From the NCBI RefSeq assembly GCF_964204645.1, contig NC_134034.1, forward strand, positions 10,056,962 to 10,120,961: 64,000 nt of DNA. Reading direction: 5' to 3'. A program made the position numbers and the translations under genes. This document shows positions 4,784 to 24,809 of the stretch, piece by piece. Source of the DNA: Tubulanus polymorphus. Lineage: Eukaryota; Animalia; Nemertea. Below the pieces are notes generated by a model. The model was given only the letters and a program-made list of their open reading frames with translations, had not been told where the DNA came from and did not search any database. How positions within the stretch are numbered: the first letter of the stretch is position 1; every line of letters begins with the position of its first letter.

Positions 4784-7700
4784 ATGGAGGCGTCGAGCGG
4801 AGGGAGCCATATTCCGAAGATCATGGTTTTTCGGCCAACGATGGACGAATTTAAAGACTTCACTAAATACATCGGTTACATCGAGTCGTGCGGTGGACAC
4901 AAAGCAGGTGTCTGTAAAGTAAGTTTTCTTTCAGGCGGGTTAAGATTAAGACCGGTTTTAACTCGAACCCTCGGGCAAAGTCAGGTCTTGGATGTAAGAG
5001 CAGTTGTAAGACCATCTTAATTCTATTGGATAGAAACATCAGGCTAGATGCTGTCTAAGACCATGGCTAATTGATTCGTAGAATAGCAGTGTTAACTGGG
5101 TTTAGAATAAATAACAAGTCGAGTAGTATTTTAAAGATTAACTATTTAGGTAAACTATTCTATAGATAGTTAACTTAGGCCTATATAGGGCTAGTACTAC
5201 TTGTCTCGTTATTCATGGCTTATCGAACAACTTAAGACCAGTTTAGGACCATCTAAAGCCCATCTAACTTAAGACCAGTCTAAACTCATTTTGGTTCTAT
5301 AACCAATCTAATATCTGTAAATCAGTCTTTAAGTTCATTTTGGTTCTTATAACCGATCCAACAACTTAAGACCAGTCTTTAGATTGAAGTCAAGACCACT
5401 TTTAGACTTGTGAACAGTTTTAAATTAACCCCTGGGGTTAAATACATTTCCAAATTGCAATTAATTTCAACCTAAGATATAGAAATTTCAAGTCAGAAGT
5501 AACTTTGATTTTTGCAGGTGATCCCGCCGAAAGAATGGAAGCCTCGACGAGAGAGATACGATAAATTGGACATGATGATCCCGGCGCCGATCTCTCAGAT
5601 GATTTCCGGAACGAAGGGTTTATATCAACAGTTCAATATACAGAAAAAACCGATACACGTTCAAGACTTCGAACAGTTGGCGTATGATATCAAGTAAGTG
5701 AAGCATCCTCTCTCCTTCACATTAACGCCCTCTGGTGTTTAAATCTGATGACATCATGAGACTCTGTTACAGTACACAGTCCTAGTAGACACATCCTCCA
5801 TCACAGGGATTTGAACCTGATGACATCGTGAGACTCTGTACATTACAGTACAAACCCCTGCCTTAGTGGACACATCCTCCCTCACAGGGATTTGAACTTG
5901 ATGACATCATGAGACTGTGTACATCACAGTACAAACCCCTGTCCTAGTAGACACATCCTCCATCGCAGGGATTTGAACTTGATGACATCATGTGACTCTG
6001 TCACAGTACAAACCCCTGTCCTAGTAGACACATCCACCATCGCAGGGATTTGAACCTGATGACGTCATGAGACTCTGACACAATACAAACCCCTGCCTTA
6101 GTAGACACATCCTCCATCACAGGGATTTGAACTTGATGACATCATGAGACTCTGTCACAGTACAAACCTCTGTCCTAGTAGACACATCCTCCCTCACAGG
6201 GATTTGAACCTGATGACATCATGAGACTTGTCACATTCTTCTCAGACAGGGATTTGAACTGAATCGCATCAGTTTAACAATTTTTCTCCTTAACTTAAAT
6301 TTAAATTTAAATTTTTAAATTTAAAAACTGTTTAAACTTAAATTTTCGTATTTGTGAATTGTTAAAGGTATATGACGCCGTATCACGACGATCAGGAGGA
6401 ACTGGAGCGCAATTACTGGAAGAATATCACGTATAACTCACCGATTTACGGTGCCGATTTATCCGGGTCACTTTACGATACCGATCAAAATATATGGAAT
6501 ATTAATAAACTAGGTATGTACTGCGGCAAGTGAGGATCCACCAGGTGTTCCTAGTATGACTGCGAAAGGTGTTAGAAACTCCTTTAATTGAGCAAAATGT
6601 CAGAAACTCCTTTGAAACATCAATTTTTAGATGCTTTGAACATGAATGGCTTCATTAGACTTATTCAGTTTATTTTGAAGCAGGAATTTTTTGTCACCTT
6701 ATTGAGCGGTTATCAAGTTAAGTGTCGTGTCAAGGAAGAATATTTGCTTATTAATCCACAAAATCGAGAGTTTACCGAGATCAGCAGGACTGATTAAGGA
6801 GGAGTCTGCTGTGATCAGGATATAAAAGTGATGCAAACGCTTCCTCGAAAACTGAAATTATCTCCTTTAAAACTCCTTGAAATGAAAACTCTTCATAACC
6901 AGGAATGACTGATCTGTAGGGGACCCTGTAATGATTGATCTGTAGGGACCCTGTATATCCAGGAATGACTGATCTGTTGGGACCCTGTATATCCAGGAAT
7001 GACTGATCTGTTGGGACCCTGTATATCCAGGAATGACTGATCTGTTGGGACCCTGTATATCCAGGAATGACCGATCTGTAGGGACCCTGTATATCCAGGA
7101 ATGGCTGATCTGTTGGGACCCTGTATATCCAGGAATGACTGATCTGTAGGGACCCTGTATATCCAGGAATGACTGATCTGTAGGGACCCTGTATATCCAG
7201 GAATGACTGCTCTGTAGGGACCCTGTATATCCAAGAATGACTGATCTGTATAGACCTTCGCTGGGGGTAACTTGAAATTCGATGATTTTCACAAAAACTA
7301 AAAACAGTAAAACTGGGTCCAGAACTGAGGAAACAGTTCCGAATTCACGAGTTGATGATTGTTATTAATTGTTTTAGGTACGATACTGGATTTGGTTCAG
7401 GATAATTACGGAGTTAAAATCGAAGGTGTCAACACGGCGTATTTATATTTCGGAATGTGGAAGGCGACGTTCCCGTGGCACACCGAGGACATGGACCTAT
7501 ACAGCATCAACTATCTGCATTTCGGCGCGCCGAAATCGTGGTACGCGATCCCGCCTGAACACGGAAAACGCTTTGAACGTTTAGCCGCAGGTAAATGATA
7601 ATGATAATGATGATAATTATAATGATTTACTGCAGTACTGGGTCCAGTTTCACGAATAAGTTTGAGCCTAAAACGGTTAAGTTTGAATTGTTGTCCTCAT

Positions 7701-10700
7701 TGAAAACGTGAAGTAACTAATAGCGATTACACCAAAAATTTGAGTTTAACTTTTTTGTGAAACTGGGCCCTGTTCAAATCAGATATCGTAATGCATCCTC
7801 TAACTCTAAGATATGGCTACTCGCAGTCTACTGTACCATTTACAACTCTGATATCACTTAGAATCTGACGAATGATTTGAAAATATTTGCACTGTGATTT
7901 TATCAATTAGAAAATCTATTCATCGAAACGTTATTACGAATTAATGTAAATTTCAATTTTGTGTGTAGGATTTTTTCCGACGAGCGCGAAGACTTGCAGC
8001 GCTTTTTTGCGGCACAAAATGTCGATCATCTCGCCGAGTATACTGAAACAATACTCGATACCGTTTAACAAGGTTAGTTACGACGTAAGCCACTAGGGGT
8101 AGGTGGAGTGGCGATTTAAAAAAGCGAATTCTTTCATTGTAATACGAGCCTCGAAACACTTGTCCGATCGACCGGGTCAAGTTTATTCTTATAAGGACAA
8201 GTAGGCTATGATTATCACTCGTCCACCGGGTTTGTGTAGCTTTTTCCCAATCGATACTACGAATGATTGTGCCGCCAATCGGACTGCCCTTGTAGGGCTA
8301 GAGAAATTTCAGATATGCTTGACCCCCAGGCAAGACGGTGTCTTTCATTCCTTAGATCGGACCCCGTAATAGAGTATGGATTCAAAATCTTGAGAAAAAA
8401 TGTGGCCCTTGAATTTACGAATCTATATTTTCTTTTGTAGATTACGCAATATGAAAATGAATTCATGATAACATTTCCGTTTGGTTATCATTCCGGTTAC
8501 AATCACGGTTTCAATTGTGCAGAATCGACGAACTTCGCGACGCTTCGCTGGATCGAGTACGGAAAACGATGTACTATGGTACGTATTATGTATAATACTC
8601 TTTAGTCGACTACACCTTCCCAGCAGTCCCAACACGCTACCGAGTTCCCTGATTCTCAACCTGGTGAAATATTTACAGCAGTCCCAACGCTACCGAGTTC
8701 CCTGATTCTCAACTCGGTGAAATATTTACAGCAGTCTCAACACGCTACCGAGTTCCCTGATTCTCAACTCTGAAATATTTACAGCAGTCCCAACACGCTA
8801 CCGAGTTCCCTGATTCTCAACTCGGTAAAATATTTACAGCAGTCCCAACACGCTACCGAGTTCCCTGATTCTCAACTCGGTGATATATTTACAGCAGTCC
8901 CAATGCTACAGAGTTCCCTGATTCTCAACTCGGTGAAATATTTACAGCAGTCCCAACACGCTACCGAGTTCCCTGATTCTCAACCCGGTGAAATATTTAC
9001 AGCAGTCCCAACACGCTACCGAGTTCCCTGATTCTCAACCCGGTGAAATATTTACAGCAGTCCCGACACGCTACCGAGTTCCCTGATTCTCAACTCGGTG
9101 AAATATTTACAGCAGTCCCGACACGCTACCGAGTTCCCTGATTCTCAACTCGGTGAAATATTTACAGCAGTCTCAACACGCTACCGAGTTCCCTGATTCT
9201 CAACTCTGTGAAATATTCACAGTCTAGAATTAGGTGGATTCGTACCAGAATTCTATGTTTTGTTACCTAAATTCAAAAACGTGATTTGATTTCGTCGAAT
9301 TTTCAGTGTAAATGTAAGAAAGACCATGTGAATATCAGTATGGATAGTTTCGTGAAGAAGTTTCAGCCAGATTTGTACGACAGCTGGAAATCCGGCAAAG
9401 ACGTGCGCCCACATCCCGAGGACGACCAATCAAAACTTTACAAGAAGAATCTCGTCGCCGCTGCTGCGGCTGCTGCTGCTGCTGCAGCCATTCCTGAACA
9501 CACAGCTACCACCAGGTATGACAAATAATCGCCTGCCTTAACCCATTCAGTGCTGACTTATTGATACCTTAAAGTGCTGGGGATAATTTGAATATTTTGA
9601 AAAATTCCACCCTAGTGTTTTGAATAAAGGGAATACCACTGTAGTGGGTCTACACCGCAGTGCGGTGTATTGTTAGTTACTAATATTTCACTATGTTTGA
9701 CTGGTGCTGCCATTTTTCAAGAGAGATAATTAGTAATTACCAATTACATCAATACACCGCAGTGCGGTGTACTAATAAAATCCATCACTGATTCATACAC
9801 CGCACTGAAAGGGTTAAATCATTGTGGTGGTCGTTTACCCGGTATGGACCCTATCACAACTCCTTGAAAATATATATACTCCAGGAAACAGTGAAAGCAA
9901 GTCAAATAAAAGTTGTCCACGAACTTTTTTAACCCAACCAAAAACTGAAAACATTTCTGGGAGAAAATAGAAATTTTGTCTATTTCGATGAATTTTATTA
10001 ACTCGTATTTTCTCGTGCAGTTCGACCGCCGAAATAAAATACGAACAAACGTCGTCGTCGTCCGCCGGGAACGACAATAAAACGGGTGGACTGAAGTTGA
10101 AGATTAAAATGGACAGTTTGAAAGCCGAAGTCGTCGAATCAACCGTCGATGAATTCTCGATGACGAACAACGCGAAGAAGAAAAAGAGAAAATCCGAAAT
10201 GAAAAAGCCGAGCGGTAAGTGAGCCCTTATTACAAGTATATTTCACTGAGATCTGTTGTTACTTTGGAAATAGAGGATTCCACTTGCGGCGTGTACCTGC
10301 GCACCCGGTCTAGTGTGGAAGGGGTTCCTACCGTGCTGTGACTGTAGCAATGCCATCAGGTTCGAATCCCCGCCGATGCAGGATGGTCTTTCTTGACGTG
10401 GTGTCCGCAGTTCGGGGAAATAGGGAAAAACTCTAGAATTTTTGAATATTTGGGAATTTCGAGAAAATTTCTTCTAATCGGGGAAATATTTGGGAAATTC
10501 ATTTACATTTCATGTATTGCATTTTGCGGAGGGCAACTTTCTTCGGCAATTTCCCTTGAGAATCATCTTTATCAACCAGTCACCACTAAAATATTGACTG
10601 TAGTTGTATGTCCAATGATGGTATCTGTTTATTTTTACGAAGGCCCCCATTTTCCATTTGGGAAAATTGAAAGATCGCCTATGAAATACTTGGGAAAAAC

Positions 10701-13700
10701 TTGGTAATTGTGGGAACCATGTCTTCGATTGTCAAATCGATTATAACTATGAAAACTATCGAATTCGAATTGTTCTCTTACGTATTAATTTATTTCTAGG
10801 GAGCCTGTCTGCCGAAGAGGAGTCGATAGCGATCGACGTTTTAACGATCTCGCATGAAACCAAAACGGCAAGCAACCAATTAAAACGATTCCCGATTCAC
10901 ATACCTCGCTCGGACGAGGAATCGACGACCGGCTGCACCTGTCCGCGGATACCGGCGGCGAAGAAAAAGAGCAAGGGCAAAGTCATCGCGGCGGCGGCAG
11001 ACGGCGAGGAAACGACGACGTGCGATTATTGTCGAACAGTAAACGTCGGACGGAGCAAATCTACGGCGACGAAACGTAAATCGACCGATTCTATCAGCGC
11101 CGGAGGCGGTAATGATGATTCAAAGGTTTCGTCGAGTCCGAAAAAATCAAAACTCGTGCCGTCAGACGCGGAGAAGAAATTGAAAAAAACGGTTTCGACT
11201 GCTTCCGCGTCGTCGCCGGGAAAAAAGAAGTCGTCGGAAAATTCCGATTCGAGTCGAGACACAAAATCGTCGTCGTTATTGAAACTCGAAACGACGAATA
11301 AAAAAACGCGGAAATTAGACGATGACGTTAAAGTTCAAACGGCAGCCGTACGAACGGACTCGAAATCGGAATCCGATTTTAAGAGCGACGTGGATTTAGC
11401 GGCTCAGTACGCGACGATGTCGGCGTGGAAGAAGAACGCTCACGAGGTTACCGTGCCAACGAACTTCACGTTCGACGCCGCGCGAGTCTACGCCGGTTTA
11501 GATACGCGCGACGACCTCGACGCGATCCGCTGCGGGTACGGCGAAGTCGACGCCGCGCCGCCGACCGGTCGCGCCGTCAAGTACGAATGCTTCTACTGCG
11601 GCATCCACGTGACGCCGATGCGCGCGTTGATCACGCAGCACGTCAAGCGCCACCTATACGGCTGCGCGAGCAAGTGTCGAGTGTGCGGTTTGGCGTTCAA
11701 GAGCGATTACATCCTGGCGATGCATGTCGAGGTGGCGCATCGTATCGGCGCCGCGTCGAAACACTCGTGCGTACGGTGCCACGCCAAGTTCCGAGACGCC
11801 GCTGAACATTACAAACACCTGAAATGGTGCGCGCCGGACATCGTCGACAAATCGATCGCGGCCATCTTGGATACGTTGTACGCGAAGTGTCGTTCTTCTT
11901 CAGCGGCGGAGATCGAACATTTTACTCGAGCGCCAAATGCCAAGTCGACGTTGCGGTGTAAATATTGCGCCGTGACGAAGATGTCGCCGAAAACGATGGC
12001 GGCGCACGTCGACAAGTCTCACCGTGCGGACGGCGCGATCGCGTGTCGGATATGTGGCGTTTATTTCTCGTCGTTCGACGCCGTCGAGCGCCACGTGTTC
12101 GCCGAGCATTACGCGCGGGGCGCCGCGTGCCCGTATTGCGATCGCGACGCCGGCTTGGACTCGGCGGCGGCGTTCGCGCGGCACACGCGCGTCGGCTGCT
12201 GGCGTAAACCGATTCTGGCGCGTTTATCGCAGTGCAACGTCGCGGCCGATTTTGCGGACGGCGTCGGTTTGCGCGAGGTCGCGTTGACCGATTTATACGC
12301 CGAGTTGAAACTGTCGAAGTTGATCGAGCCGAACTCGGGCTCGAGTGGATACCTGCTCAGCGGGCGTCTGTATAAATGCCTTTATTGCGCATATCGCGTC
12401 GTGTGCAAGGAGAACATCAAGCAGCACTTGACGGTGCACACGTCGGGCCGCGCGCACGCTTGCCGCGTCTGCGGCAAACACGCGTGGACGGACGCAGATT
12501 TGAAGAAGCATATTCTCGGCGCGCACTACGGCTTCGACGTCAGCATCAAACGGTGTCGTCTGTGCAACACGGGTTTTCACGACGCGTATTCGCTGCAGCA
12601 GCATCTGAAGGCGAAGACATCGCGCGATCGCGCGTCGGATTCGCGATGCGCATTTTTCACGGCGTTCGGCGGGGAGTTCTATTGCCGCGCGTGCAAAACG
12701 AACGAGGACATACAGACGTATCACGCGCACGAGTGCGACGCGTCGTCGGACGCCGGCGACGAACGCTTCGTCTACCGCTGCCCGAACTGTTACGCCAGCT
12801 ACCGCAACGTGGCGAGCCTCGTCGGGCACTTGCGACGCGAGCGCTGTCGTCGCAAGTCGACAGCGGCGGCGCGCGTGCGTTTAAATGAGGCGTCGGCGCG
12901 ATGGAAACTGAAGTGCATCGCGTGCAAGCAGATATTCGTGCGTCTGGCCGACTTTCTGAAACATGGGCACGCGCGCGCGCTCCGTGACAACGGACTCGAG
13001 GCGTTGGCGTCGACGCCGCCTGACGGCAAGGAATCGCCGGTCGTGTCGATCATGCGCGCTGTGCGCTGCGACGTGTGCGCACGTTCGTTCCAGTCGAAGT
13101 ACCAGCTAGGCGTGCACGTCGCGTATAGGCACAGGGCAACCGCGCACACGGCCGCAGCCGCGTTTAAATGCGATCACTGCGGGAACTTGTTTGCGCGCGA
13201 ACACCTACTGAAAATGCACGCCTCGTTGCGCCATAGCGGTACCGCGACTATACGCCACCGGCGCCATCGATGCCGCGTTTGTTACAAGGATTTCGCGTCG
13301 CGCGGTCAACTCGTCTCGCATGAGAATCTCAACTCGCTCTGTGGGCAGTTCGTCTGCGGCAAGTGCTACAAGGTGTTCGCGGCTAAACGCGCGCTCGAGC
13401 GCCACCTGTTGACCGCACACAAAATGACGGCGCACCGTTGCGCTGCGTGTCGCAAGGCGTTCACGTCGACGAAGATATTCATGCGCCATCAGAGATTGTG
13501 CGACAAGTCGACGAGAACGGCGGCGGGCAAGAAGGTCGCGGCGCCGCCGACGGCCGAAGTCAAGGTCGAATCGGAAATCGGAACGATCATCAAAGTCGAA
13601 CCCGGAAAATCGTCGTCGTCGGACGAATCGGGAAAACCGTTCGTTTGCGACGTCTGTTCGAAGTCGTTCGCGAAAAAGTATTACCTGAAGCGACATCGGA

Positions 13701-13849
13701 TTCGAGTGCACGACGTATCGTCATCGGACGCCATGACAACCGCGGCGAACTCGTCACCGGTCGAGTGTCGCGTCTGCCGCAAAACGTACAAAGGATCGAA
13801 GAACCTGGCGAAACACCAGCGGAAACATCACCCGGAATCGGTGTCCTAA
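4784..13849 (+). CDS. KDM4: Lysine-specific demethylase 4 (KDM4/JMJD2 family) with C-terminal C2H2 zinc-finger array, ~1454 aa
   Basis: Nine GT-AG coding exons with consistent phases: 4784-4918, 5518-5693, 6368-6513, 7378-7590, 7969-8072, 8441-8578, 9307-9515, 10021-10214, 10800-13849 (4365 nt). JmjN: [38 protein letters not shown]. JmjC: [40 protein letters not shown] and [25 protein letters not shown]4 Zn site: CSAFLRHK...CKC. The last exon is in frame with ORF 11156..13849. Confidence 0.92.
5738..6262. repeat. ~77-bp minisatellite (~6-7 copies) in KDM4 intron 2
   Basis: Unit acagggatttgaacctgatgacatcatgagactctgtcacagtacaaacccctgtcctagtagacacatcctccatc. Period 77 between 6104 and 6181. Confidence 0.92.
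6897..7255. repeat. 34-bp minisatellite (~10 copies) in KDM4 intron 3
   Basis: Unit ccaggaatgactgatctgtagggaccctgtatat. Explains repetitive ORFs 6867..7292 and 6893..7234. Confidence 0.95.
7636..7772. mobile_element. Short MITE-like repeat (second copy ~50068-50162)
   Basis: Inverted termini (ctgggtccagtttcacgaa ... ttgtgaaactgggccc). Internal sequence cctaaaacggttaagtttgaattgttgtcctcatt is shared with 50097-50131. Confidence 0.7.
8160..8365. mobile_element. MITE-like dispersed repeat (second copy ~43900-44160)
   Basis: Shared ggacaagt...attatcactcgtccacc...atgcttg...ctttcattccttagatcggacccc. The 43.9-kb copy has inverted ends ggtccgatctaag/cttagatcggacc. Confidence 0.65.
8618..9222. repeat. 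55-bp minisatellite (~11 copies) in KDM4 intron 6
   Basis: Unit agcagtcccaacacgctaccgagttccctgattctcaactcggtgaaatatttac. Period 55 (8946 to 9001). Confidence 0.95.
9538..9817. mobile_element. piggyBac-like MITE (TTAA-flanked, TIR CCCTTTCAGTGC)
   Basis: ttaa|cccattcagtgc ... gcactgaaaggg|ttaa. Closely similar to copies at 29108, 30260 and 41706. Confidence 0.8.
10290..10390 (+). mobile_element. tRNA-derived SINE-like head (B box GGTTCGAATCCC)
   Basis: ggtctagtgtgg...caggttcgaatccccgccgatgcaggatgg. No cloverleaf is evident. Confidence 0.45.
11575..13830 (+). other. Array of ~19 C2H2/C2HC zinc fingers in the terminal KDM4 exon
   Basis: Repeated CxxC-x12-H-x3-4-H/C motifs, e.g. [95 protein letters not shown]. 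Several fingers are degenerate. Confidence 0.9.
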
Positions 13850-16144
13850 TAGCGGCCGCCGTTAACCCTTAACCTCTGCGGCTTATCGACGTTAGCAGAC
13901 TGTTTTCAGAATTTTTCAGTCGAGTTCGAAGAATTAACGAATATATTGAAAGCGACTGTTTGGACCCTCGGTCTGTTACAACCCCTTTCAGTGCTGACTA
14001 ATAAACTAGGTCCCGAGTGTTTAATTGTATTTTCAGTATTTATCGCGATGGAACGTATATCCCCTCGGTTCTAGTAGCGTTTATACGTTAAGCGTTTGAG
14101 TGGTAGCTACCGATATACGGAATATTTATTGCTTTGAAATTTGTTTTTTTCGTTCGTATATATATATAAATGATGTTTTACACGCGTGAGTTGTTTTATT
14201 TTAGATTTCTGAAAAATCATGTAGAGAGCGGGTTATTTTTTTGTAGCTAGACAGAACGATGATTATGGGAAGCGATTTGACCGGGCTTCGATAAAGGCGC
14301 GGGTTAGATTCAGAAAAATCCGGAAAAATGGATGTCAATGAAAACTATAAAGAAATGCACAAAAAAATCTGTGAAAAATCATGAAAGTTTGTCTAAATAT
14401 TTTGATCACCTTTTCATGCCATGTGCTGTGCGTAACTCGGACTTAATGCGTGAGCTGGGTTAATAAAAAGAGATTTTATTCTAATCTGTTCGCATAGGTG
14501 GCCCCAGGAATTTTCATAGGGGGTTCGAATAAGCGTCAATCCAGTATCCATGCACAATGTCGGATGTTCGGTGGGCCTCCCCAAAAAAACTTTTTAAAAA
14601 TTGGAGGCTTTAGAGACGTTTTCCAGGCTCTAAATGAATCATTTAGTTAAAAGACTGGTGAAATTGGCAAGAAAAATCTTGAACATTGAATACATATCAA
14701 CTTGAGGAGTAAACTATCTCGAAAAGGGGTTGCGTCCGCTACCCCCGCACCCCCCCTGTGGGGACGCCTATGGTTCAGGTCGTGATCCTTGTGACCCTTA
14801 ATGTTATTGTACTTCGACATGTTCGACACGAAAAAAGGTACGAGAAAATTGTAGAAAAATCCTGGTATTTCGTCGCGATTGAATGTAAACAAAAAGGCGA
14901 TTGTCGGGATGTGAAAAAATGTGTTAAATTCCACATTTCGTCACTTAACTTGTCACTATTTTTCAAGTGTTAATTTGTATTTCTGATTCATTTATACGAA
15001 GCGCAAGTCATCATTTGGATAAGTCCTCTATATAGGGCCAACTACGGCGACTTACTTGCGAAAATGACCCCCCCCCCCCCACTAATAACCCCCCTCTCCT
15101 TTAACAACTATACCTCAGTCGATGACGTCAGTTCTTGCTGCTGCTGCTGCTGCTGCTGCTGTTTATTGAGCGCTCCTATCGTTTTCTGTGTATAATGCTA
15201 TTATTTAATATATTTATATCGATATGCAACTGATCAGATATATGTACGTGCAGGGTTCTTATGGGTTTTGGAAATTTTTTCGTTATCGCTATGGAAATGT
15301 GGAAAATCAGAAAATGCTCTCAAAGTAGAATTTTCTTTTTGTTTTGAATTCAAGGCTATATACTTAGATGTCTCAAAGCCATAAACAATGCGAAAACACT
15401 TGGCCGATGATATTGATAATTGGCACATATTTACTTTGATTGGGCCTATATTACCTGTTGTAGGTTGGTGATGTGTAACTCAGGGGTACCGGTATGGAAA
15501 ATTTATAATCTCGGGTGTGGAAAAAATTATGGAAAACGAAATCGGAAAACCCATAAGAACTTTGTCTGTAATGATAATTGTAAATATTGTTTCGCGAATG
15601 ATGTAGAGTTATTTCTTTGTGTTTCATCACGAATTGCATTTTGCGGTTTTTCCACGCCTGTCACGCGGTTCCACAGTTATGAGTTATCAATCAGGGTCCA
15701 GGGGATTCTCTGTGTATCGTCACAATAATGACATAACGTTTCACAAATGTCAGTGCAATTGCGTACTACTACTGTAATGCTTAATTTATATGAAAAAATG
15801 GCCGATTTTGCGTACAGGGAGGGGGTGAACAGTCAAAATTCATGCGTACGTAATGAATGAATGAACCCAGATTGTTTTTGCTCCGATTATGAAATTGTGT
15901 GTAAATTGAAAAGTCGTTAGTTGAAATATCTAATAATGTATACAAATACGTAGTGTGTGTGTATATTATAATAATCATCAGTTATTGATTAATGAGTTAT
16001 TGATTAATTATTATTACTAATTATCATATTAAATGCATGATTCCTCAGCTCTATACAGATATAGTCGTTTTCTCGATTCCTTCTCGGGCGCTGTTGATTC
16101 CTCATCGTAAATTGATCAAATTTTCAGATTTTAGACCGATTACA

Positions 16145-17508: not shown

Positions 17509-20500
17509 TTACTTCTTTTTCGAAGCTGAAAAAAAAAACATTGAAATGAATTTGAAGCAATCTCTAGAGAAACTAGCGAAAACAACGCACTAACGAATTT
17601 TGTTCTTACCCGCGACGCCGAAACATTTATCCCCTTGACGAAGTTTACTGTGTAAAAGAAAATATATGCCGTTTAAAATGTATCTAGACCCTTAAAGAAA
17701 AGATACGTGTCCCTAAACAAAATCCCCCTATGACGTCATCAAATTGTTTAAGTAATTTGATAGTTCCATTAAATTCCCTCAACGACATCACCGCGCTATG
17801 TTTATTCTCATTGGAGTGATTATAGGCTAGAATACTTACGCTCCAACCGGGAGTTCTTTATAGCTGACTTGCTTGCGATTTCTAGACGAGCGTTTGCCCT
17901 CCGGAGCGCTGCCACCATCATCCGAGCTATCGGAAAAATATAGACAACAATTTTTTCACAGGGTGGCTACTTTCATTTGAACGAAATTCCTCGACTTTTC
18001 TCTGATTTCCAGGTTAAAAACCCACCCTCATTTCCATCATTTATGCATTTTAGGATCATTTCAGAGAAGAACTTGACGAAATTCAGACCCATCACTCACC
18101 CGGCTAGCGAGACAATTGATGTTTTTCGACGCAGGGGGAACGACGTTTCCAACTCCTCCTGTTTTTCTGTATTTTCTTCCTGTGAAACCGCGCGACGAAA
18201 CGATGAAAAAGAAAAAAAAGAACATTTTTCAAATATCTTCTTTTAAGTTGCATTCGCTAATTTTCAAGTGCAGCGTTGTATCAATCATCGATTACTTGGC
18301 TGTCGTGTACCTGATTTTCGATTTCTGGTGCGATATTTTCCACTTCGTCCATATCTAACTGTTTTTCCACTTTAACCTTCGTCGTGCGTCGAGACGACGT
18401 CGTTTTCTTGGCCGCCGCGCTTTTCTTGGTCGTCGATTTTTTCATTTTCGTCGGTGGTGGCGCCACGAACTCGTCGTACGAGTCGCGGTCCGCGTTCCTC
18501 GCCGATAAATCCGTTTTGCTCGTACGTTTACGAGATATTGTCGATTTCGATCGTTTTTTCGTCGCGTCGTTGTCCGCTGTCATCGTCGTCTGTTCCCCGA
18601 CGACGTCTGCTGTTCTCCGTCGGCTCGTCGTCTGCTCTTCCTCCTCGTCGTCGTCGGAAACGACTACACGACGATTCGTCAGGTGGCGCTTGCGTTGCAC
18701 TGGTACGACTGGTGAATCGTCGCGTTCGTCCGACGACGATTTCGTCGCCGTTTTGCGCCAGTGGCTTTCGCGGCGCTTTTCCGCAACGTTGCTACTAGCG
18801 CCACCTTCGATCCGTTTCAATAATTTCTGAGTTTCGTCCTCGCCGTTCCCATCATCACTCTTTTCGCCGATTATTGCACTTTCCTCCTTCCTAGTTTTTG
18901 TTCGTCTGGCGTTTGATTTCTTGCTATTACCCATTTCTTCATTGCCCAAAATTCGTTCCTCCTCCAAATCATCCTCAACTTCATCCTCCTCCTTTACCTT
19001 CCTCTTTTGCACCTTTTCCTTCACCTCCGCGTCATCATCGCTACCACAAACCACCTCCTTTTCTTTCTTTTTTCGCTCATTTTTCACACCCTTCGAATCA
19101 TCATTTACTTTCTTGCTATTACCAATTTCATCTCCAATTTCTTGATCGCCCAAAATCTGTTCCTCCTTCAAATCATCCTCAACTTCATTCACCTCCTTTA
19201 CCTTTCTCTTTTGCACCTTTTTCTTCCTCTCTCTGTCATCATCACTCCCATGAACAACCTCCTTTTCTTTCTTAATTCGCTCATTTTTCGTTTCCTTCAA
19301 ATCATCATTAGATTTCTTGCTATTACCATTTATTACCATTATTTTGTCATTGCCCAAAATTTGTTCCTCCTTCAAATCATCCTCAACTTCATCCACCTCC
19401 TTTACCTTCCTCTTTTGTACCGATTTCTTCCCGTCCGCGTCATCCTCGCTACCATGAACGACCTCCTTTTCTTTCTTCTTTCGTTCCTTTTTCCTTCGCT
19501 TCAAATCATCACAATCTTCATCAACTTTTTCTGCCATTTTTTGTGCCTTACAGATTACATCTTCCTTTTGCTCCTTAACTTTGGACTTTTCATCGAGACA
19601 ATCTTCCGCGAATACCATTCGGACATCCTCTACCGCTGCAGCTCCTTTTTCCGTCGGCGCAAAATCTGAATAATCGCCGACTTGTTTCGCCATTTTGCTT
19701 TTACTTTTCGTAGCGACTTTATTCCGCGTTTCCTCCTTATTTTCATCGTCCAAAATATCCCCCTCATCATCGGAAGGTAATTTCGCCTTTTTGCGCAAAA
19801 CTTTCGTCCGCGTGGAAATTTTCTTTTTCGCGACTTCTTTCTTCGGTTTCGTCGCCGCGTCGATGGCAGCAGCAGCGTCCGTCTGCTTCGATTCATCCGC
19901 CGAATCCGGAACTTTCCTCTTCTCAACGCGAGCATTTACCACCTTTTCATCATCGGCATCTTTCTCGTCGTTATCATCTTCATTTATCAAGGCGTCGTCG
20001 TCTTTATCGTACGTCGTATTCAGAACTGATTGCTTTCGATGGGAATCCGCGGCCACCTTGTCGCCGCCGACGACGACCGTCTCGTCCGCCATGTTATACT
20101 CCCCGCTGCCGGCGGGTGGCGTTGCTTTCTCGGTTGAAACGGCTGCCACGTCTGAGGCTTTGTTATTCTCGCGGAACTGATTCAGCGTGATCATCGGTTT
20201 ACGTACGGACTCGTTCGCCGACATGTCGAAAACCGTCAGATTTGCATTGGCAGCCGCTTTATCCGGAGTGAAGCCTCGGAAATCGAATTTCGACGACGAA
20301 TCCAGTTTCGAGTCCGCTGCTACCGCTGCCGCAACACGGGTTTTCGTTTTTGTCTTCTTCTTCGGCAGCGGCGCGTCTTTCTTCGCGATCGTGACCGACG
20401 CGACCGTTTTCGAGAAATCGCGTCGACCGGCTTTGAATCCGAATTTGCCCGGTTTGTTGACAGTCAAATGAAACTGTTTCAGTTTATTTACCGCCGCCCC

Positions 20501-23500
20501 CGACGACGAAGACTCGTCCGACGAAGCAGACGTCGACGACGACTCCGTTTTCTGTTTCGTCGGCGCCATTTCGATCTTACCGCTCTCGTTGACGGCCGCT
20601 TTCCGCGCTCGAACGCCCGGCGGTTTCAAACGCGATTCGTGCGTCACCAACGACAACTGACGACGTTCGATTTGATTATCGACGACGTCGGCAGACGGCG
20701 CCACGTGCGCTTGCTCCGAATCCGACTCCAATTCGGGCATCACTTCGTTTTCGAGCAGGTCGAGGTCGTCGACGTGGGGTAGCTCGATATCGATCGCTAA
20801 CGTAGCAGTCATGTCCATCGGACTGTTCGGGAACGTCGTTTTCTCGAACGCCTGCGCCGGACTTTTAGTCGGACTCAACGAATACGTCCGACGTTTTCGC
20901 GCCGTTCTAGATTTATCGTCGTCATCGCCGTTGACGACGATCGACGGAACTTTCGCGGCAGCGCCATTGTTGCTATCGCTTGCCCTCGATGGCTTACTAC
21001 CTCCGGATTTCGATTTTTTCCGCGTGGAAAGTCGTTTCGCGCCGAGCGACGTTTTCGGAGGCGAACACGCGATGAACGTGTACGAAAACGGCCGATCCGC
21101 ATTTTCCGGGGTAGCGCTATCGCTCGTATTCGTAATGCCGGAACCGGACTCGGCGGCGGCGCACATCTTTTTAACGAGCGTCGGTATCGGACGATCGTCC
21201 GGATTGACGAACGGTTTGCAACTATTTTCCGCGGTGCCCGACTCGCCGTTGTTATCTACCGGCTCGTCTGCTGCCGCCGCCGTTGCTAAGGTCGCTGTCA
21301 TCTCTTCGCAGTCGCTCGGTATGTTCGAATGTCGGATTTTTTTCGATTTTTGGAACGCGGCGGCCGTTTCGTAATCCGTCGGCGCGTCGCTACCCGCTCG
21401 TTCGTTATTCCCAGTGTCGCCGTCGTCTTGGTTTGGTCGGGTTACGACCGACAGCCGGTCGACCAGTGCCTGAGCGATCGAACCACGCTCCAGTAACCCC
21501 GAACGACGACTGTTGCAGCTGCTACGACTGGAGTTACGTCGAGACAACGCCTCGTCATCCTCATTTACTGAAACAAGAAACCAGATTCTTAATACAGACT
21601 TTCAAGATTTTACTGCATTGAATGTTTTGAAAGTTCAGGGCCTGGTTTCATAGACTGAGTATCAAAGTTATCCCTAGGGGTAAATCCTCAATCTGGGTGA
21701 CAACCACCATAGTTACAATGAGAAACCATGGTTATAACTGACAAATTTTAAAATGTTCCCAGGGACTATTTCTCTTCCACATCTATGAAACCTAGCCCAG
21801 AAGAGAAACTCAGTGACCTCTAAGGTTAGCACTATCTATCGCTATATAGGTAAACTATTTATTTGACGCATGAGCTTTCGCTACTAATGTAATATATAGA
21901 AGCTTCATCAGGTGATTGAGTGATGAAGCTTCTATACATTAGAAGCGAAAGCTTGTGCGTCAAATAAATAGTTAACCTCCACGAGCGAATAAATCAGAAA
22001 AAATATCTTGGTTTAAAATCTAACAATTCCTTCATTTCTCATTGAACCACTGATAGAGAAATGTGTGGTCAATAGCATTATCTGACTTTCCCGAGTTCTC
22101 CAGGTTTTCGGAAAAATTCGTCAAATTCCTTTAGTTTTTCCAGATTTTTTTCTAGATTTGTCTGATTGTCTGAGTTTTCCAGATCAGTGGCTATGTGAAA
22201 CTACACCAAGAATTTAAGTTGAACATTTTCAACATCGTATGTGCTTGAAACATTGTTTTTACCTGTCGACATGTTGTGAGCGGGAGCGTCCGCGTATAAC
22301 GATATGTTGTTCAATTCGTCCAATAGCACTGATTTTTCCACGATCAATGACAGATCAGATGGCGCCGCTGTCGGCTGATCAGCAACCGGCACGCGAGCGG
22401 CAACTTTGTTCAAACAACGTCGTTTCAGTGGTACACTTGAAAAAAAACAAACAAATTCTATAGAAGTTTTTTGTGACATACCGGCATATTTTTCACTGAT
22501 CGGATTTGAGCGGAGTCTACTGTATCATCCAACTCAGATATATCACTCTCAAGTCAAAAGATCAGACTTGAGCCGAGTCTACTGTACCATCCAACTCAGA
22601 TATCACTGTCAAGTCAAAAGATCCGACTTGAGCGCAGTCTACTGTACCATCCAACACAGATATCACTCTCAAGTCAAAAGATCTGACTCGAGCGGAGTCT
22701 ACTGTATCATCCAACTCAGATATCACTTTCTAGTCAAAAGATCGGACTTTAGCGCAGTCTACTGTATCATCCAACTCAGATATATCACTCTCAAGTCAAA
22801 AGATCAGACTTGAGCGGAGTCTACTGTACCATCCAACTCAGATATCACTGTCAAGTCAAAAGATCAGACTTGAGCGGAGTCTACTGTACCATCCAACTCA
22901 GATATCACTGTCAAGTCAAAAGATCTGACTTTCAGCGGAGTCTACTGTACCATCCAACTCAGATATCACTCTCAAGTCAAAAGATCCGACTTGAGCGCAG
23001 TCTACTGTACCATCCAACACAGATATCACTGTCAAGTCAAAAGATCCGACTTGAGCGGAGTCTACAGTACCATCCAACTCAAATATCACTCTCAAGTCAA
23101 AAGATCAGACTTGAGCGCAGTCTACTGTATCATCCAACTCAGATATCACTGTCAAGTCAAAAGATCCGACTTGAGCGGAGTCTACTGTACCATCCAACTC
23201 GGATATCACTGTCAAGTCAAAAGATCAGACTTGAGCGCAGTCTACTGTACCATCCAACTCAGATATCACTTTTTACTCAAAAGATCCAACTTGAGCGGAG
23301 TCTGCTGTATCATCCAACTCAGATATATCACTCTCAAGTCAAAAGATCAGACTTGAGCCGAGTCTACTGTACCATCCAACTCAGATATCACTGTCAAGTC
23401 AAAAGATCCGACTTGAGCGCAGTCTACTGTACCATCCAACACAGATATCACTCTCAAGTCAAAAGATCTGACTCGAGCGGAGTCTACTGTATCATCCAAC

Positions 23501-24717
23501 TCAGATATCACTTTCTAGTCAAAAGATCGGACTTTAGCGCAGTCTACTGTATCATCCAACTCAGATATATCACTCTCAAGTCAAAAGATCAGACTTGAGC
23601 GGAGTCTACTGTACCATCCAACTCAGATATCACTGTCAAGTCAAAAGATCAGACTTGAGCGGAGTCTACTGTACCATCCAACTCAGATATCACTGTCAAG
23701 TCAAAAGATCTGACTTTCAGCGGAGTCTACTGTACCATCCAACTCAGATATCACTCTCAAGTCAAAAGATCCGACTTGAGCGCAGTCTACTGTACCATCC
23801 AACACAGATATCACTGTCAAGTCAAAAGATCCGACTTGAGCGGAGTCTACAGTACCATCCAACTCAAATATCACTCTCAAGTCAAAAGATCAGACTTGAG
23901 CGCAGTCTACTGTATCATCCAACTCAGATATCACTGTCAAGTCAAAAGATCCGACTTGAGCGGAGTCTACTGTACCATCCAACTCGGATATCACTGTCAA
24001 GTCAAAAGATCAGACTTGAGCGCAGTCTACTGTACCATCCAACTCAGATATCACTTTCTAGTCAAAAGATCTGACTCGAGCGCAGTCTACTGTATCATCC
24101 AACTCAGATATATCACTCTCAAGTCAAAAGATCAGACTTGAGCGCAGTCTACTGTACCATCCAACTCAGATATCACTTTTTACTCAAAAGATCCAACTTG
24201 AGCGGAGTCTGCTGTATCATCCAACTCAGATATATCACTCTCAAGTCAAAAGATCCGACTTGAGCCGAGTCTACTGTACCATCCAACTCAGATATCACTG
24301 TCAAGCCAAAAGATCTGACTTGAGCAGAGTCTACTGTACCATCCAACTCAGATATCACTCTCAAGTCAAAAGATCTGACTCGAGCGGAGTCTACTGTACC
24401 ATCCAACTCAGATATCACTGTCAAGTCAGATATTGTTGCTGTATTTTCTTACTCACGTGTTCGTTGTTTTGGCGTCGATCTCGTTCTCTTTATCACTCGA
24501 CTCACCGGCCGGTGGTGCAAGCGATAGTTCGTTGTGCCCACCATCGTTGCCGACCATGTCCATCGCTTCACAAGTCAGTGAACCGATGTTCCGCAATACG
24601 GCGCGCAACTTTTCATTCACCACCTTACAATGAAAATATTTTAGATAAAACGGTTAAAATCTTAACCCAAAACTAGCTGGCAGTACACTCCAGTAATGCA
24701 AGTTCAGGTTAGTTTGT

Positions 24718-24809
<92 letters not shown>

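What the first reader, a model, noticed from the sequence alone, without database searches (positions are those of the whole stretch)
4784..13849. KDM4 histone demethylase fused to a ~19-finger C2H2 array: a candidate sequence-specific H3K9/H3K36 demethylase in an animal
Seen: an intact JmjN-JmjC module (HTED + distal His, Zn-binding C/H/C/C) splices in phase through two linker exons (9515 AG|T 10021; 10214 G|GG 10800) into a 3050-nt terminal exon with ~19 zinc fingers. No PHD or Tudor exons are recognisable before the convergent shugoshin 3' end. Known: animal KDM4A-C carry PHD-PHD-Tudor-Tudor readers or have short tails. JmjN/JmjC plus C2H2 fingers is the architecture of yeast Rph1/Gis1 and plant REF6/ELF6, with only 2-4 fingers, and REF6 uses them to bind DNA directly. 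Inference: this lineage independently captured a single-exon ZNF gene, creating a DNA-targeted eraser of heterochromatin marks. That is the functional opposite of KRAB-ZNF silencing and analogous in logic to PRDM9.
Basis: partly seen in the sequence, partly recalled or inferred. Interest (0 to 1): 0.92.

Follow-up and report, generated by a model that had tools for sequence, protein, structure and literature searches.

The report
Ribbon-worm KDM4 demethylase with zinc-finger tail
In the ribbon worm Tubulanus polymorphus a second copy of the histone demethylase KDM4 has swapped its usual histone-reading tail for about 17 C2H2 zinc fingers and is transcribed as one spliced mRNA, so it may be an animal demethylase steered by DNA sequence, though finger binding and enzyme activity are untested.

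Summary
Nine GT-AG exons (4784-13849, + strand) translate exactly to RefSeq protein XP_074659174.1 ("uncharacterized protein LOC141911951", Tubulanus polymorphus, 1454 aa; Pfam JmjN + JmjC + zf-C2H2).

The catalytic core is a true KDM4: E = 5.6e-161 to human KDM4C. All Fe(II), 2-oxoglutarate and Zn ligands are present, as are the KDM4A-C-type H3K36 determinants.

The genome also keeps a canonical PHD-Tudor KDM4 on another chromosome, with matching exon-boundary positions through the catalytic core. The fused gene is therefore a DNA-level duplicate.

The tail has 17 finger-like units, about 10 of them canonical. It has no TGEKP linkers and no tandem-repeat DNA. One block is collinear, at 30% identity, with a zinc-finger ORF 2.4 Mb away.

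Polymorphism indicates purifying selection (22 synonymous, 15 non-synonymous; indels in threes).

None of the 120 closest KDM4 relatives carries C2H2 fingers. None of the 150 best finger relatives carries JmjC. I found no paper describing this architecture in animals.

DNA binding, enzyme activity and the date of the duplication remain inferred or unresolved. Verdict: a real gene and a new variant of a known kind (Rph1/REF6-like architecture, arisen separately in an animal).

The parts
4784..4918 (+). Exon 1: start codon and JmjN domain
   Evidence: Pfam JmjN E 8.2e-13. The exon model equals P0001.
5518..5693 (+). Exon 2: catalytic core, carrying the IPAPI and NIQKK motifs (KDM4A Ile71, Asn86, Ile87, Gln88 equivalents)
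   Evidence: The determinants are taken from PMC3308871.
6368..6513 (+). Exon 3: catalytic core, carrying YGAD (KDM4A Tyr132 and Asp135 equivalents)
7378..7590 (+). Exon 4: N-terminal half of JmjC with the Fe(II) ligands His187 and Glu189, plus Asn197 and Lys205
   Evidence: Pfam JmjC E 1.1e-19. Residues checked.
7969..8072 (+). Exon 5: CSAFLRHK, giving Zn ligands Cys233 and His239
8441..8578 (+). Exon 6: C-terminal part of JmjC with the third Fe(II) ligand His275 and Ser-Thr of the methylammonium pocket
   Evidence: Pfam JmjC E 3.3e-10. Residues checked.
9307..9515 (+). Exon 7: CKCKKD (Zn ligands Cys305 and Cys307), the end of the conserved KDM4 core, a poly-Ala run, and a donor CAG|GTATGA
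   Evidence: The spliced contig covers 9306-9512.
10021..10214 (+). Exon 8: linker exon of 64 codons, Ser/Lys-rich, with the basic run KKKKRK at residues 426-431 (possible nuclear localisation signal)
   Evidence: Spliced on both sides in the X2 contig. No Pfam match. Basic run found.
10800..13849 (+). Exon 9: 3050-nt terminal exon. Residues 440 to about 690 are a low-complexity linker. Residues 702-1449 hold 17 C2H2/C2HC finger-like units in about six clusters, followed by the stop codon. GC is 0.59 and GC3 is 0.73.
   Evidence: Pfam zf-C2H2_4 E 8.5e-25 and zf-C2H2 E 6.7e-17. Fingers, composition. RNA contigs cover it.

Best explanation
This is a real, transcribed, selectively maintained gene of the nemertean Tubulanus polymorphus. 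It is a DNA-level duplicate of the animal KDM4 (JMJD2) histone demethylase. The ancestral C-terminal PHD-PHD-Tudor-Tudor reader module is absent. In its place are a short linker exon and one 3-kb exon encoding about 250 disordered residues and 17 C2H2/C2HC zinc fingers.

Shown here: the exon structure, the in-frame splicing in RNA, the intact catalytic, cofactor and Zn residues, the KDM4A-C-type substrate determinants, the separate canonical paralog, and purifying selection on the whole frame.

Inferred: the protein removes H3K9me3/me2 and H3K36me3/me2 as KDM4A-C do, and its fingers rather than histone-mark readers decide where it acts. The most likely mode is direct binding of particular DNA sequences by the better-formed tandem finger clusters (residues 1195-1339, 1388-1449 and 965-1014). 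That is how REF6 in plants and Rph1/Gis1 in yeast are targeted.
For: Gene model:
- The nine-exon GT-AG model equals RefSeq XP_074659174.1.
- A spliced contig from another individual joins exon 7, exon 8 and exon 9.

Enzyme:
- The core matches human KDM4C at E 5.6e-161, KDM4A at about 4e-158 and KDM4D at 6e-141.
- Equivalents of KDM4A H188, E190, H276, Y132, N198, K206, C234, H240, C306 and C308 are all present. So are the H3K36 determinants I71, N86, I87 and Q88. R309 is replaced by K (determinants from PMC3308871).

Paralogy:
- Exactly two KDM4 loci exist in the 268-Mb genome. The query ranges of the per-exon matches agree between them.
- The other copy has PHD and Tudor domains.

Selection:
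- 22 synonymous against 15 non-synonymous polymorphisms, where sites are 23% and 77% respectively. This gives pN/pS of about 0.2.
- Both indels are 3 nt long.
- No Cys or His ligand is hit.

Fingers:
- The finger clusters match solved DNA-binding arrays: ZNF568 at 1e-18, CTCF at 4e-10, PRDM9 at 3e-8.
- REF6 fingers bind DNA directly (PMC7105484, abstract seen).
Against: - The RNA support is one contig in one run of unrecorded library type. Contigs cannot show full-length molecules, so exon 1 to exon 9 continuity on a single mRNA is not shown.
- Contig depth rises from 16 at the junction contig to 40-46 over the 3' part of the finger exon. This could be 3' bias or a second, internal start.
- No finger linker is TGEKP-like. 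Most fingers are H-x4-H. About 7 of 17 units lack the canonical hydrophobic core, and five of the 17 end in Cys. Such fingers can bind protein or RNA instead of DNA.
- Neither activity nor binding was measured.
Confidence: 0.6

Rival explanations
1. The fusion protein is real, but the finger tail does not read DNA sequence. It mediates protein-protein, RNA or general chromatin contacts. The protein would then be a KDM4 with a different scaffold rather than a sequence-targeted eraser.
For: - There are no TGEKP linkers, and the fingers sit in scattered clusters separated by 42-73 residues.
- Seven of 17 units lack the canonical core, and five of the 17 end in Cys.
- The best outside relatives of the array are only 25-34% identical.
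- The closest paralog ORF also hits zf-C2H2_jaz, a double-stranded-RNA-binding finger type.
Against: - Several adjacent fingers keep the canonical 6-7-residue linker length.
- The C-terminal clusters match solved DNA-bound arrays at E 1e-18 to 1e-8.
- In the two known JmjC-C2H2 lineages the fingers bind DNA (PMC7105484; Rph1 and Gis1 papers listed).
Confidence: 0.25
2. The joined mRNA is a minor conjoined or read-through product. The main products would be a short-tailed KDM4, ending 4 codons into retained intron 7, and a stand-alone zinc-finger protein started inside exon 9 (first in-frame Met at residue 645).
For: - Reading through the exon 7 donor meets TAA after 4 codons.
- X2 contig depth is 16 at the junction contig and 40-46 further 3'.
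- X3 and X4 hold unspliced contigs 10006-10327.
- The finger exon is compositionally distinct, with GC3 of 0.73 against 0.43-0.63 elsewhere.
Against: - Both introns have strong canonical sites and are removed together in the only junction-spanning contig.
- Exon 9 has no ATG for its first 205 codons, yet it stays open and shows a synonymous excess there too, 7 synonymous against 6 non-synonymous.
- Exon 8 has no purpose other than bridging.
- RefSeq gives one product only.
- X3 and X4 may simply be DNA or pre-mRNA.
Confidence: 0.1
3. The gene is a decaying duplicate or an annotation artefact without function.
For: - The catalytic core evolves faster than the canonical copy. It is 70-78% identical to other animals' cores, against 77-85% for the canonical copy. 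Its end branch is 1.05 against 0.40.
- The array has no close ortholog in any database searched.
Against: - The 1454-codon frame is uninterrupted and every catalytic and Zn ligand is intact.
- pN/pS is about 0.2 and indels come in threes.
- The gene is expressed and spliced.
Confidence: 0.04

Closest known systems
Animal KDM4A/B/C (JMJD2A-C), including the canonical T. polymorphus paralog XP_074643622.1
   Same: The JmjN-JmjC core is 70-78% identical. It shares the Fe(II), 2-oxoglutarate and Zn ligands and the H3K36 determinants. Exon-boundary positions through the core match those of the paralog.
   Different: There is no PHD or Tudor module anywhere in the gene or the window. A 1000-residue zinc-finger tail stands in its place. 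The core evolves faster.
Yeast Rph1/Gis1 and plant REF6/ELF6 (JmjN-JmjC followed by C-terminal C2H2 fingers)
   Same: The domain order is the same. By language-model features the nearest ESM Atlas clusters are the ascomycete JmjC+C2H2 cluster (0.95) and the ELF6 cluster (0.92). In REF6 the fingers give DNA-sequence-specific targeting (PMC7105484).
   Different: It is not orthologous to them. Rph1 scores 283 bits against 539 for human KDM4C, and the core nests among spiralian KDM4s. It has 17 fingers in clusters, where REF6 has four (PMC7105484) and Rph1/Gis1, from my own recall and not checked here, two to four. REF6 acts on H3K27, whereas this core has KDM4A-C determinants.
PRDM9 and KRAB zinc-finger proteins (a chromatin-modifying or recruiting module plus a C2H2 array)
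   Same: The logic is the same: a histone-modifying activity tied to a long finger array. Finger clusters match PRDM9 and ZNF568 arrays at E 3e-8 and 1e-18.
   Different: The enzyme is an eraser, not a writer or recruiter. There are no TGEKP linkers, no minisatellite-like repeat DNA in the finger exon, and no KRAB, SET, BTB or ZAD domain.
KDM2A/KDM2B (JmjC demethylases with a CxxC finger that binds unmethylated CpG DNA); comparison from my own knowledge, not tested here
   Same: These are animal JmjC demethylases recruited by a DNA-binding zinc finger. A DNA-guided eraser is therefore not without precedent in animals.
   Different: They belong to a different JmjC subfamily and use a single CxxC domain that reads CpG rather than a multi-finger C2H2 array.

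Membership tests
KDM4/JMJD2 subfamily of JmjC histone demethylases | JmjN and JmjC domains in one chain | tested here: met
   Pfam JmjN E 3.8e-13 at residues 14-48 and JmjC E 6e-41 at residues 174-290.
KDM4/JMJD2 subfamily of JmjC histone demethylases | Fe(II) triad H-x-E...H and 2-oxoglutarate contacts (KDM4A H188, E190, H276; Y132, N198, K206) | tested here: met
   His187, Glu189, His275, Tyr131, Asn197 and Lys205 are present. The residue list comes from my knowledge of KDM4A structures; the alignment is.
KDM4/JMJD2 subfamily of JmjC histone demethylases | Structural Zn site Cys-His-Cys-Cys (KDM4A C234, H240, C306, C308) | tested here: met
   Cys233, His239, Cys305 and Cys307 are present.
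KDM4/JMJD2 subfamily of JmjC histone demethylases | Closest similarity to KDM4 rather than to KDM5 or other JmjC groups | tested here: met
   KDM4C scores 539 bits, KDM4D 473, Rph1 283 and KDM5A 145. The core nests inside spiralian KDM4s.
KDM4/JMJD2 subfamily of JmjC histone demethylases | Demethylation of H3K9me3/me2, and of H3K36me3/me2 for the A-C type | not testable with these tools
   Only the determinants could be read. The I71, N86, I87 and Q88 equivalents are conserved and R309 is replaced by K (PMC3308871).
Canonical animal KDM4A-C architecture | C-terminal double PHD plus double Tudor | tested here: not met
   P0001 has no PHD or Tudor Pfam hit, whereas the paralog P0004 has them. 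tblastn of the paralog tails against the window gives nothing below E 2.9.
Rph1/Gis1/REF6-type JmjN-JmjC-C2H2 proteins | Domain order JmjN, JmjC, then C-terminal C2H2 fingers | tested here: met
Rph1/Gis1/REF6-type JmjN-JmjC-C2H2 proteins | Common descent of the fused architecture (orthology) | tested here: not met
   The core groups with animal KDM4s and with its own canonical paralog. The architecture therefore arose separately.
Rph1/Gis1/REF6-type JmjN-JmjC-C2H2 proteins | Fingers bind specific DNA and recruit the enzyme | not testable with these tools
   Inference only.
Classical tandem DNA-binding poly-ZNF (KZFP- or PRDM9-like array) | Tandem fingers joined by TGEKP-type linkers, encoded by repeated DNA units | tested here: not met
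   No TGEKP linker is present, only some 6-7-residue linkers of other sequence. TRF finds no tandem repeat in 10800-13849.

The most novel reading that the evidence does not exclude
An animal lineage has naturally built a sequence-specific, DNA-guided eraser of H3K9me3/H3K36me3. The zinc fingers would take an active KDM4 core to defined loci and keep them free of heterochromatin. This would be a functional mirror image of KRAB-ZNF silencing, and an independent animal re-invention of the REF6/Rph1 principle with a much longer array.
Probability: 0.35. Interest if true: 0.8.

Novelty: new variant of a known kind. Interest (0 to 1): 0.6.

Why it matters
Animal KDM4 enzymes are thought to find their sites through histone-mark readers (Tudor and PHD) or partner proteins. 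Direct DNA targeting of KDM4-group enzymes is known only from fungi and plants.

A natural animal KDM4 tied to a long zinc-finger array would show that eraser enzymes, like the writer PRDM9 and the KRAB-ZNF recruiters, can be wired directly to DNA sequence in Metazoa. It would also offer a natural template for targeted removal of heterochromatin marks.

It is in addition a clean, datable example of domain replacement by exon capture, because the unmodified paralog sits in the same genome.

Its weight is limited. It is known from one species so far, the model already sits in RefSeq without a name, and the key functional steps are untested.

Tried and rejected
- a word-based search with residues 296-795, meant to rank fused proteins first, was swamped by low-complexity candidates. 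It gave only 7 hits, all canonical KDM4. It is uninformative on other fusions.
- an exhaustive HMMER search with residues 296-1454 returned only giant poly-ZNF proteins at 25-34% identity. None has a JmjC domain. It did not list the protein itself, so that library appears to lack this genome.
- exact-protein contig look-up found nothing on record.
- AU tests could not date the duplication. Holding Tubulanus canonical plus Lineus together gives p 0.37. Holding all canonical spiralian KDM4s together gives p 0.21.
- Pfam gave no shugoshin or any other domain for the downstream minus-strand gene.
- no tRNA and no long direct or inverted repeats around the finger exon. I therefore found no transposon signature flanking it.
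- literature searches found JmjC+C2H2 only in fungi and plants, and no paper on this gene.
- Runs X3 and X4 carry unspliced contigs, so they neither support nor contradict the splice.
- No structure or complex prediction was run, because it would not discriminate DNA binding from other roles.

Procedure notes:
- The spliced model was searched exon by exon by reference.
- Whole-protein searches used the database record P0001 returned.
- Exons were concatenated only inside scripts, to compare the model with P0001 and to classify SNPs.
Full report
WHAT IS THERE

The window is from chromosome-scale contig C10 (10,056,962-10,120,961) of a 268-Mb assembly. A protein search with the large open exon returned an identical RefSeq protein: XP_074659174.1, [quoted passage not shown], 1454 aa. 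Its precomputed Pfam domains are JmjN, JmjC, zf-C2H2 and zf-C2H2_4. The organism is therefore a palaeonemertean ribbon worm.

A script that searched GT/AG sites near the visible open stretches found one nine-exon model whose translation equals that protein exactly. The exons are 4784-4918, 5518-5693, 6368-6513, 7378-7590, 7969-8072, 8441-8578, 9307-9515, 10021-10214 and 10800-13849.

The first is CAG|GTATGA ... tgcag|T. The second is G|GTAAGT ... ttctag|GG. Scanned exon by exon, Pfam finds JmjN in exon 1, JmjC in exons 4 and 6, and C2H2 families in exon 9.

IS IT TRANSCRIBED AS ONE UNIT?

Four public runs of one study hold the finger exon. X1 matches the window without differences and covers the introns, so it is probably the assembly's own DNA.

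X2 comes from another sample and carries many SNPs. It has one 896-nt contig lying on 9306-9512, 10018-10213 and 10799-11121. Both skipped stretches are GT..AG, and the joints equal 9515|10021 and 10214|10800. A further 167 nt of that contig lie upstream of 9306, beyond the stretch I laid. This is direct evidence for an RNA that joins the last conserved KDM4 exon through the linker exon to the finger exon.

There are limits:
- It is one contig in one run whose library type is not on record.
- Contigs cannot prove continuity from exon 1 to the stop codon.
- X3 and X4 contain unspliced pieces (10006-10327), which may be DNA or pre-mRNA.
- X2 contig depth rises from 16 at the junction to 40-46 at the 3' end. 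This may be 3' bias or an internal start.
- The RefSeq model agrees, but it probably rests on the same reads.

THE ENZYME HALF

Residues 11-338 match human KDM4C at E 5.6e-161, KDM4B at 2.6e-160, KDM4A at about 4e-158, KDM4D at 6e-141, yeast Rph1 at 3.5e-83 and KDM5A at 3e-41.

Numbering runs one behind human KDM4A. These ligands are all present:
- Fe(II) ligands: His187, Glu189 and His275.
- 2-Oxoglutarate contacts: Tyr131, Asn197 and Lys205.
- Zn ligands: Cys233, His239, Cys305 and Cys307.

A mutagenesis study identified Ile71, Asn86, Ile87, Gln88 and Arg309 as separating the dual H3K9/H3K36 enzymes KDM4A-C from the H3K9-only KDM4D/E (PMC3308871). The equivalents here are Ile, Asn, Ile, Gln and Lys. 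Ser-Thr of the methylammonium pocket is kept. The core therefore looks like an active KDM4A-C-type enzyme. Activity itself is inferred.

THE PARALOG

The genome holds exactly two KDM4-type loci. One is this gene. The other is on contig C2 at 30.44 Mb. The query ranges of the per-exon matches agree between the two through the catalytic core.

The C2 gene encodes XP_074643622.1 ("lysine-specific demethylase 4C-like", 1753 aa), which has PHD_2, zf-HC5HC2H_2 and two Tudor_2 domains. The fused gene is therefore a DNA-level duplicate, not the species' only KDM4.

No trace of PHD or Tudor coding sequence exists in the 64-kb window. In the canonical copy, tblastn places the end of exon 7 near "...DDQRKLYK". 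Here exon 7 runs some 15 codons further, through a poly-Ala tract, to a different donor.

The fused copy's core is 78% identical to the canonical copy and 70-77% to other animals' cores. The canonical copy is 77-85% identical to those same proteins. The fused copy has evolved faster but remains strongly conserved.

WHEN DID IT ARISE?

A maximum-likelihood tree of 34 cores (LG+C20+F+G4) places the gene as sister of the Tubulanus canonical KDM4. Support is 91/73, which is below the tool's star threshold, and the branch is long at 1.05 against 0.40.

AU tests do not reject a duplication before the Tubulanus-Lineus split (p 0.37) or even before the spiralian radiation (p 0.21). The date is open. 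The only Lineus longissimus protein among the 120 best hits is canonical.

THE FINGER HALF

Exon 9 first encodes about 250 Ser/Lys/Ala/Thr-rich residues. Exon 8 carries a KKKKRK run.

From residue 702 a regex finds 17 C2H2/C2HC-like units in about six clusters. These lie at 702-782, 825-905, 965-1014, 1067-1121, 1195-1339 and 1388-1449. Nine have the canonical C-x2-C-x3-aromatic-x5-hydrophobic-x2-H core by script. A tenth, Cys731-His752, qualifies when its inner CxxC is used. Most units are H-x4-H, and five of the 17 end in Cys.

Several neighbours are 6-7 residues apart, which is the canonical linker length, but none of the linkers is TGEKP-like.

The exon contains no tandem-repeat DNA. The array is therefore old and diverged, unlike PRDM9 or young KZFP arrays.

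Clusters 1193-1339 and 961-1047 match solved DNA-bound arrays: ZNF568 at 1e-18, CTCF at 4e-10 and PRDM9 at 3e-8. This shows classical finger character. It does not show DNA binding.

ORIGIN OF THE TAIL

The genome has no close copy of the array. The best match is an ORF 2.4 Mb away on the same chromosome (locus L002). It aligns collinearly with residues 1066-1336 at 30% identity, E 9e-22, including the degenerate units. It shares the exon's unusual GC content of 0.58.

Contig C10 also carries clusters of long single-exon H-x4-H poly-ZNF genes at 3.17-3.35, 10.90-10.93 and 12.39-12.51 Mb. Exon 9 differs compositionally from exons 1-8, with GC3 of 0.73 against 0.43-0.63.

These facts fit capture of a pre-existing single-exon zinc-finger gene as a new terminal exon. 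They do not prove it. I found no flanking repeat or transposon signature.

IS IT UNDER SELECTION?

The contigs of the other individual(s) show 37 coding differences. Of these, 22 are synonymous and 15 non-synonymous, although only 23% of sites are synonymous. This gives pN/pS of about 0.2. Within the finger region the count is 9 against 8. The two indels are both 3 nt long, and no zinc ligand is changed. The frame is being maintained.

IS THE ARCHITECTURE KNOWN IN ANIMALS?

- Among the 120 closest KDM4 relatives of 800-2544 aa (molluscs, annelids, Lineus, arthropods, a bryozoan, a hemichordate, vertebrates), every tail is PHD/Tudor or domain-free. Only this protein has C2H2 motifs beyond the core.
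- The 150 best relatives of the tail in an exhaustive search of 1.84 billion representatives contain no JmjC.
- In the ESM Atlas the nearest JmjC+C2H2 clusters are ascomycete and plant (ELF6). One further cluster has unrecorded taxa. No metazoan cluster of 50 or more members appears.
- Full-text searches returned JmjC-C2H2 only for fungi and plants.

These searches have gaps. Rare cases in other animals cannot be excluded.

MECHANISM AND COMPARISON

The protein most likely works like REF6 or Rph1/Gis1, as a KDM4-group enzyme brought to chromatin by its own fingers. It is not a member of those lineages, because the core is an animal KDM4 and the fusion arose separately.

It fails the tested criteria of a KZFP- or PRDM9-type array (linkers and repeat DNA).

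From my own knowledge, KDM2A/B with their CxxC fingers already show DNA-guided JmjC demethylases in animals. The principle is therefore not unprecedented. The KDM4 plus long C2H2 array combination is.

VERDICT

The gene is real, spliced and constrained, and it is already modelled in RefSeq without a name.

I put about 0.6 on a finger-targeted active demethylase and about 0.35 on true sequence-specific DNA targeting.

It is a new variant of a known kind, of moderate to good interest.

Noticed in passing
window 9540-9820 and 10300-10650; also 13983-14002: Introns 7 and 8 are largely filled by very high-copy interspersed repeats, with summed contig word depth up to about 123,000. Many contigs jump from these places to 13983-14002 in the 3' UTR, where another copy ends. 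The intron 8 element carries a tRNA-like B box (GGTTCGAATCC near 10361), but ARAGORN calls no tRNA.
   Followed up: partly
window 5738-6235, 6930-7250, 8621-9222: There are three intronic minisatellites: 77 bp x 6.4 copies, 34 bp x 9.4 copies and 55 bp x 11 copies. Each gives long spurious ORFs on both strands.
   Followed up: no
window 18281-21547 (- strand); possible upstream exon 24707-25282 (- strand): This is a convergent neighbour gene with a 1088-aa Lys/Glu/Asp-rich ORF containing internal repeats. Pfam finds no family in it. A coiled-coil-like segment at 24707-25282 gives only weak hits (CENPU at E 0.08).
   Followed up: partly
window 4784-13849: CpG observed/expected is 1.7-1.9 in the exons of this gene but 0.63 in its introns. 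Many of the polymorphisms are CpG transitions.
   Followed up: no
G000:C10 at 3.17-3.35, 10.90-10.93 and 12.39-12.51 Mb (loci L002-L010): There are clusters of long single-exon poly-zinc-finger genes, almost all with H-x4-H spacing. They have 14-27 fingers and open frames up to 1666 aa. This appears to be a lineage-specific ZNF family concentrated on this chromosome.
   Followed up: partly
L021 4064-8104 (G000:C10:12502063-12506103): This is a 1346-aa ORF with several internal peptide repeat families and dispersed C2H2-like fingers. It lies just upstream of the closest paralog of the finger exon.
   Followed up: no
window 22400-24200: This long tandem array gives repeated ORFs on both strands (units such as ...YCTIQLRYHCQVKRSDLSGV...). 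It lies upstream of the neighbour gene.
   Followed up: no
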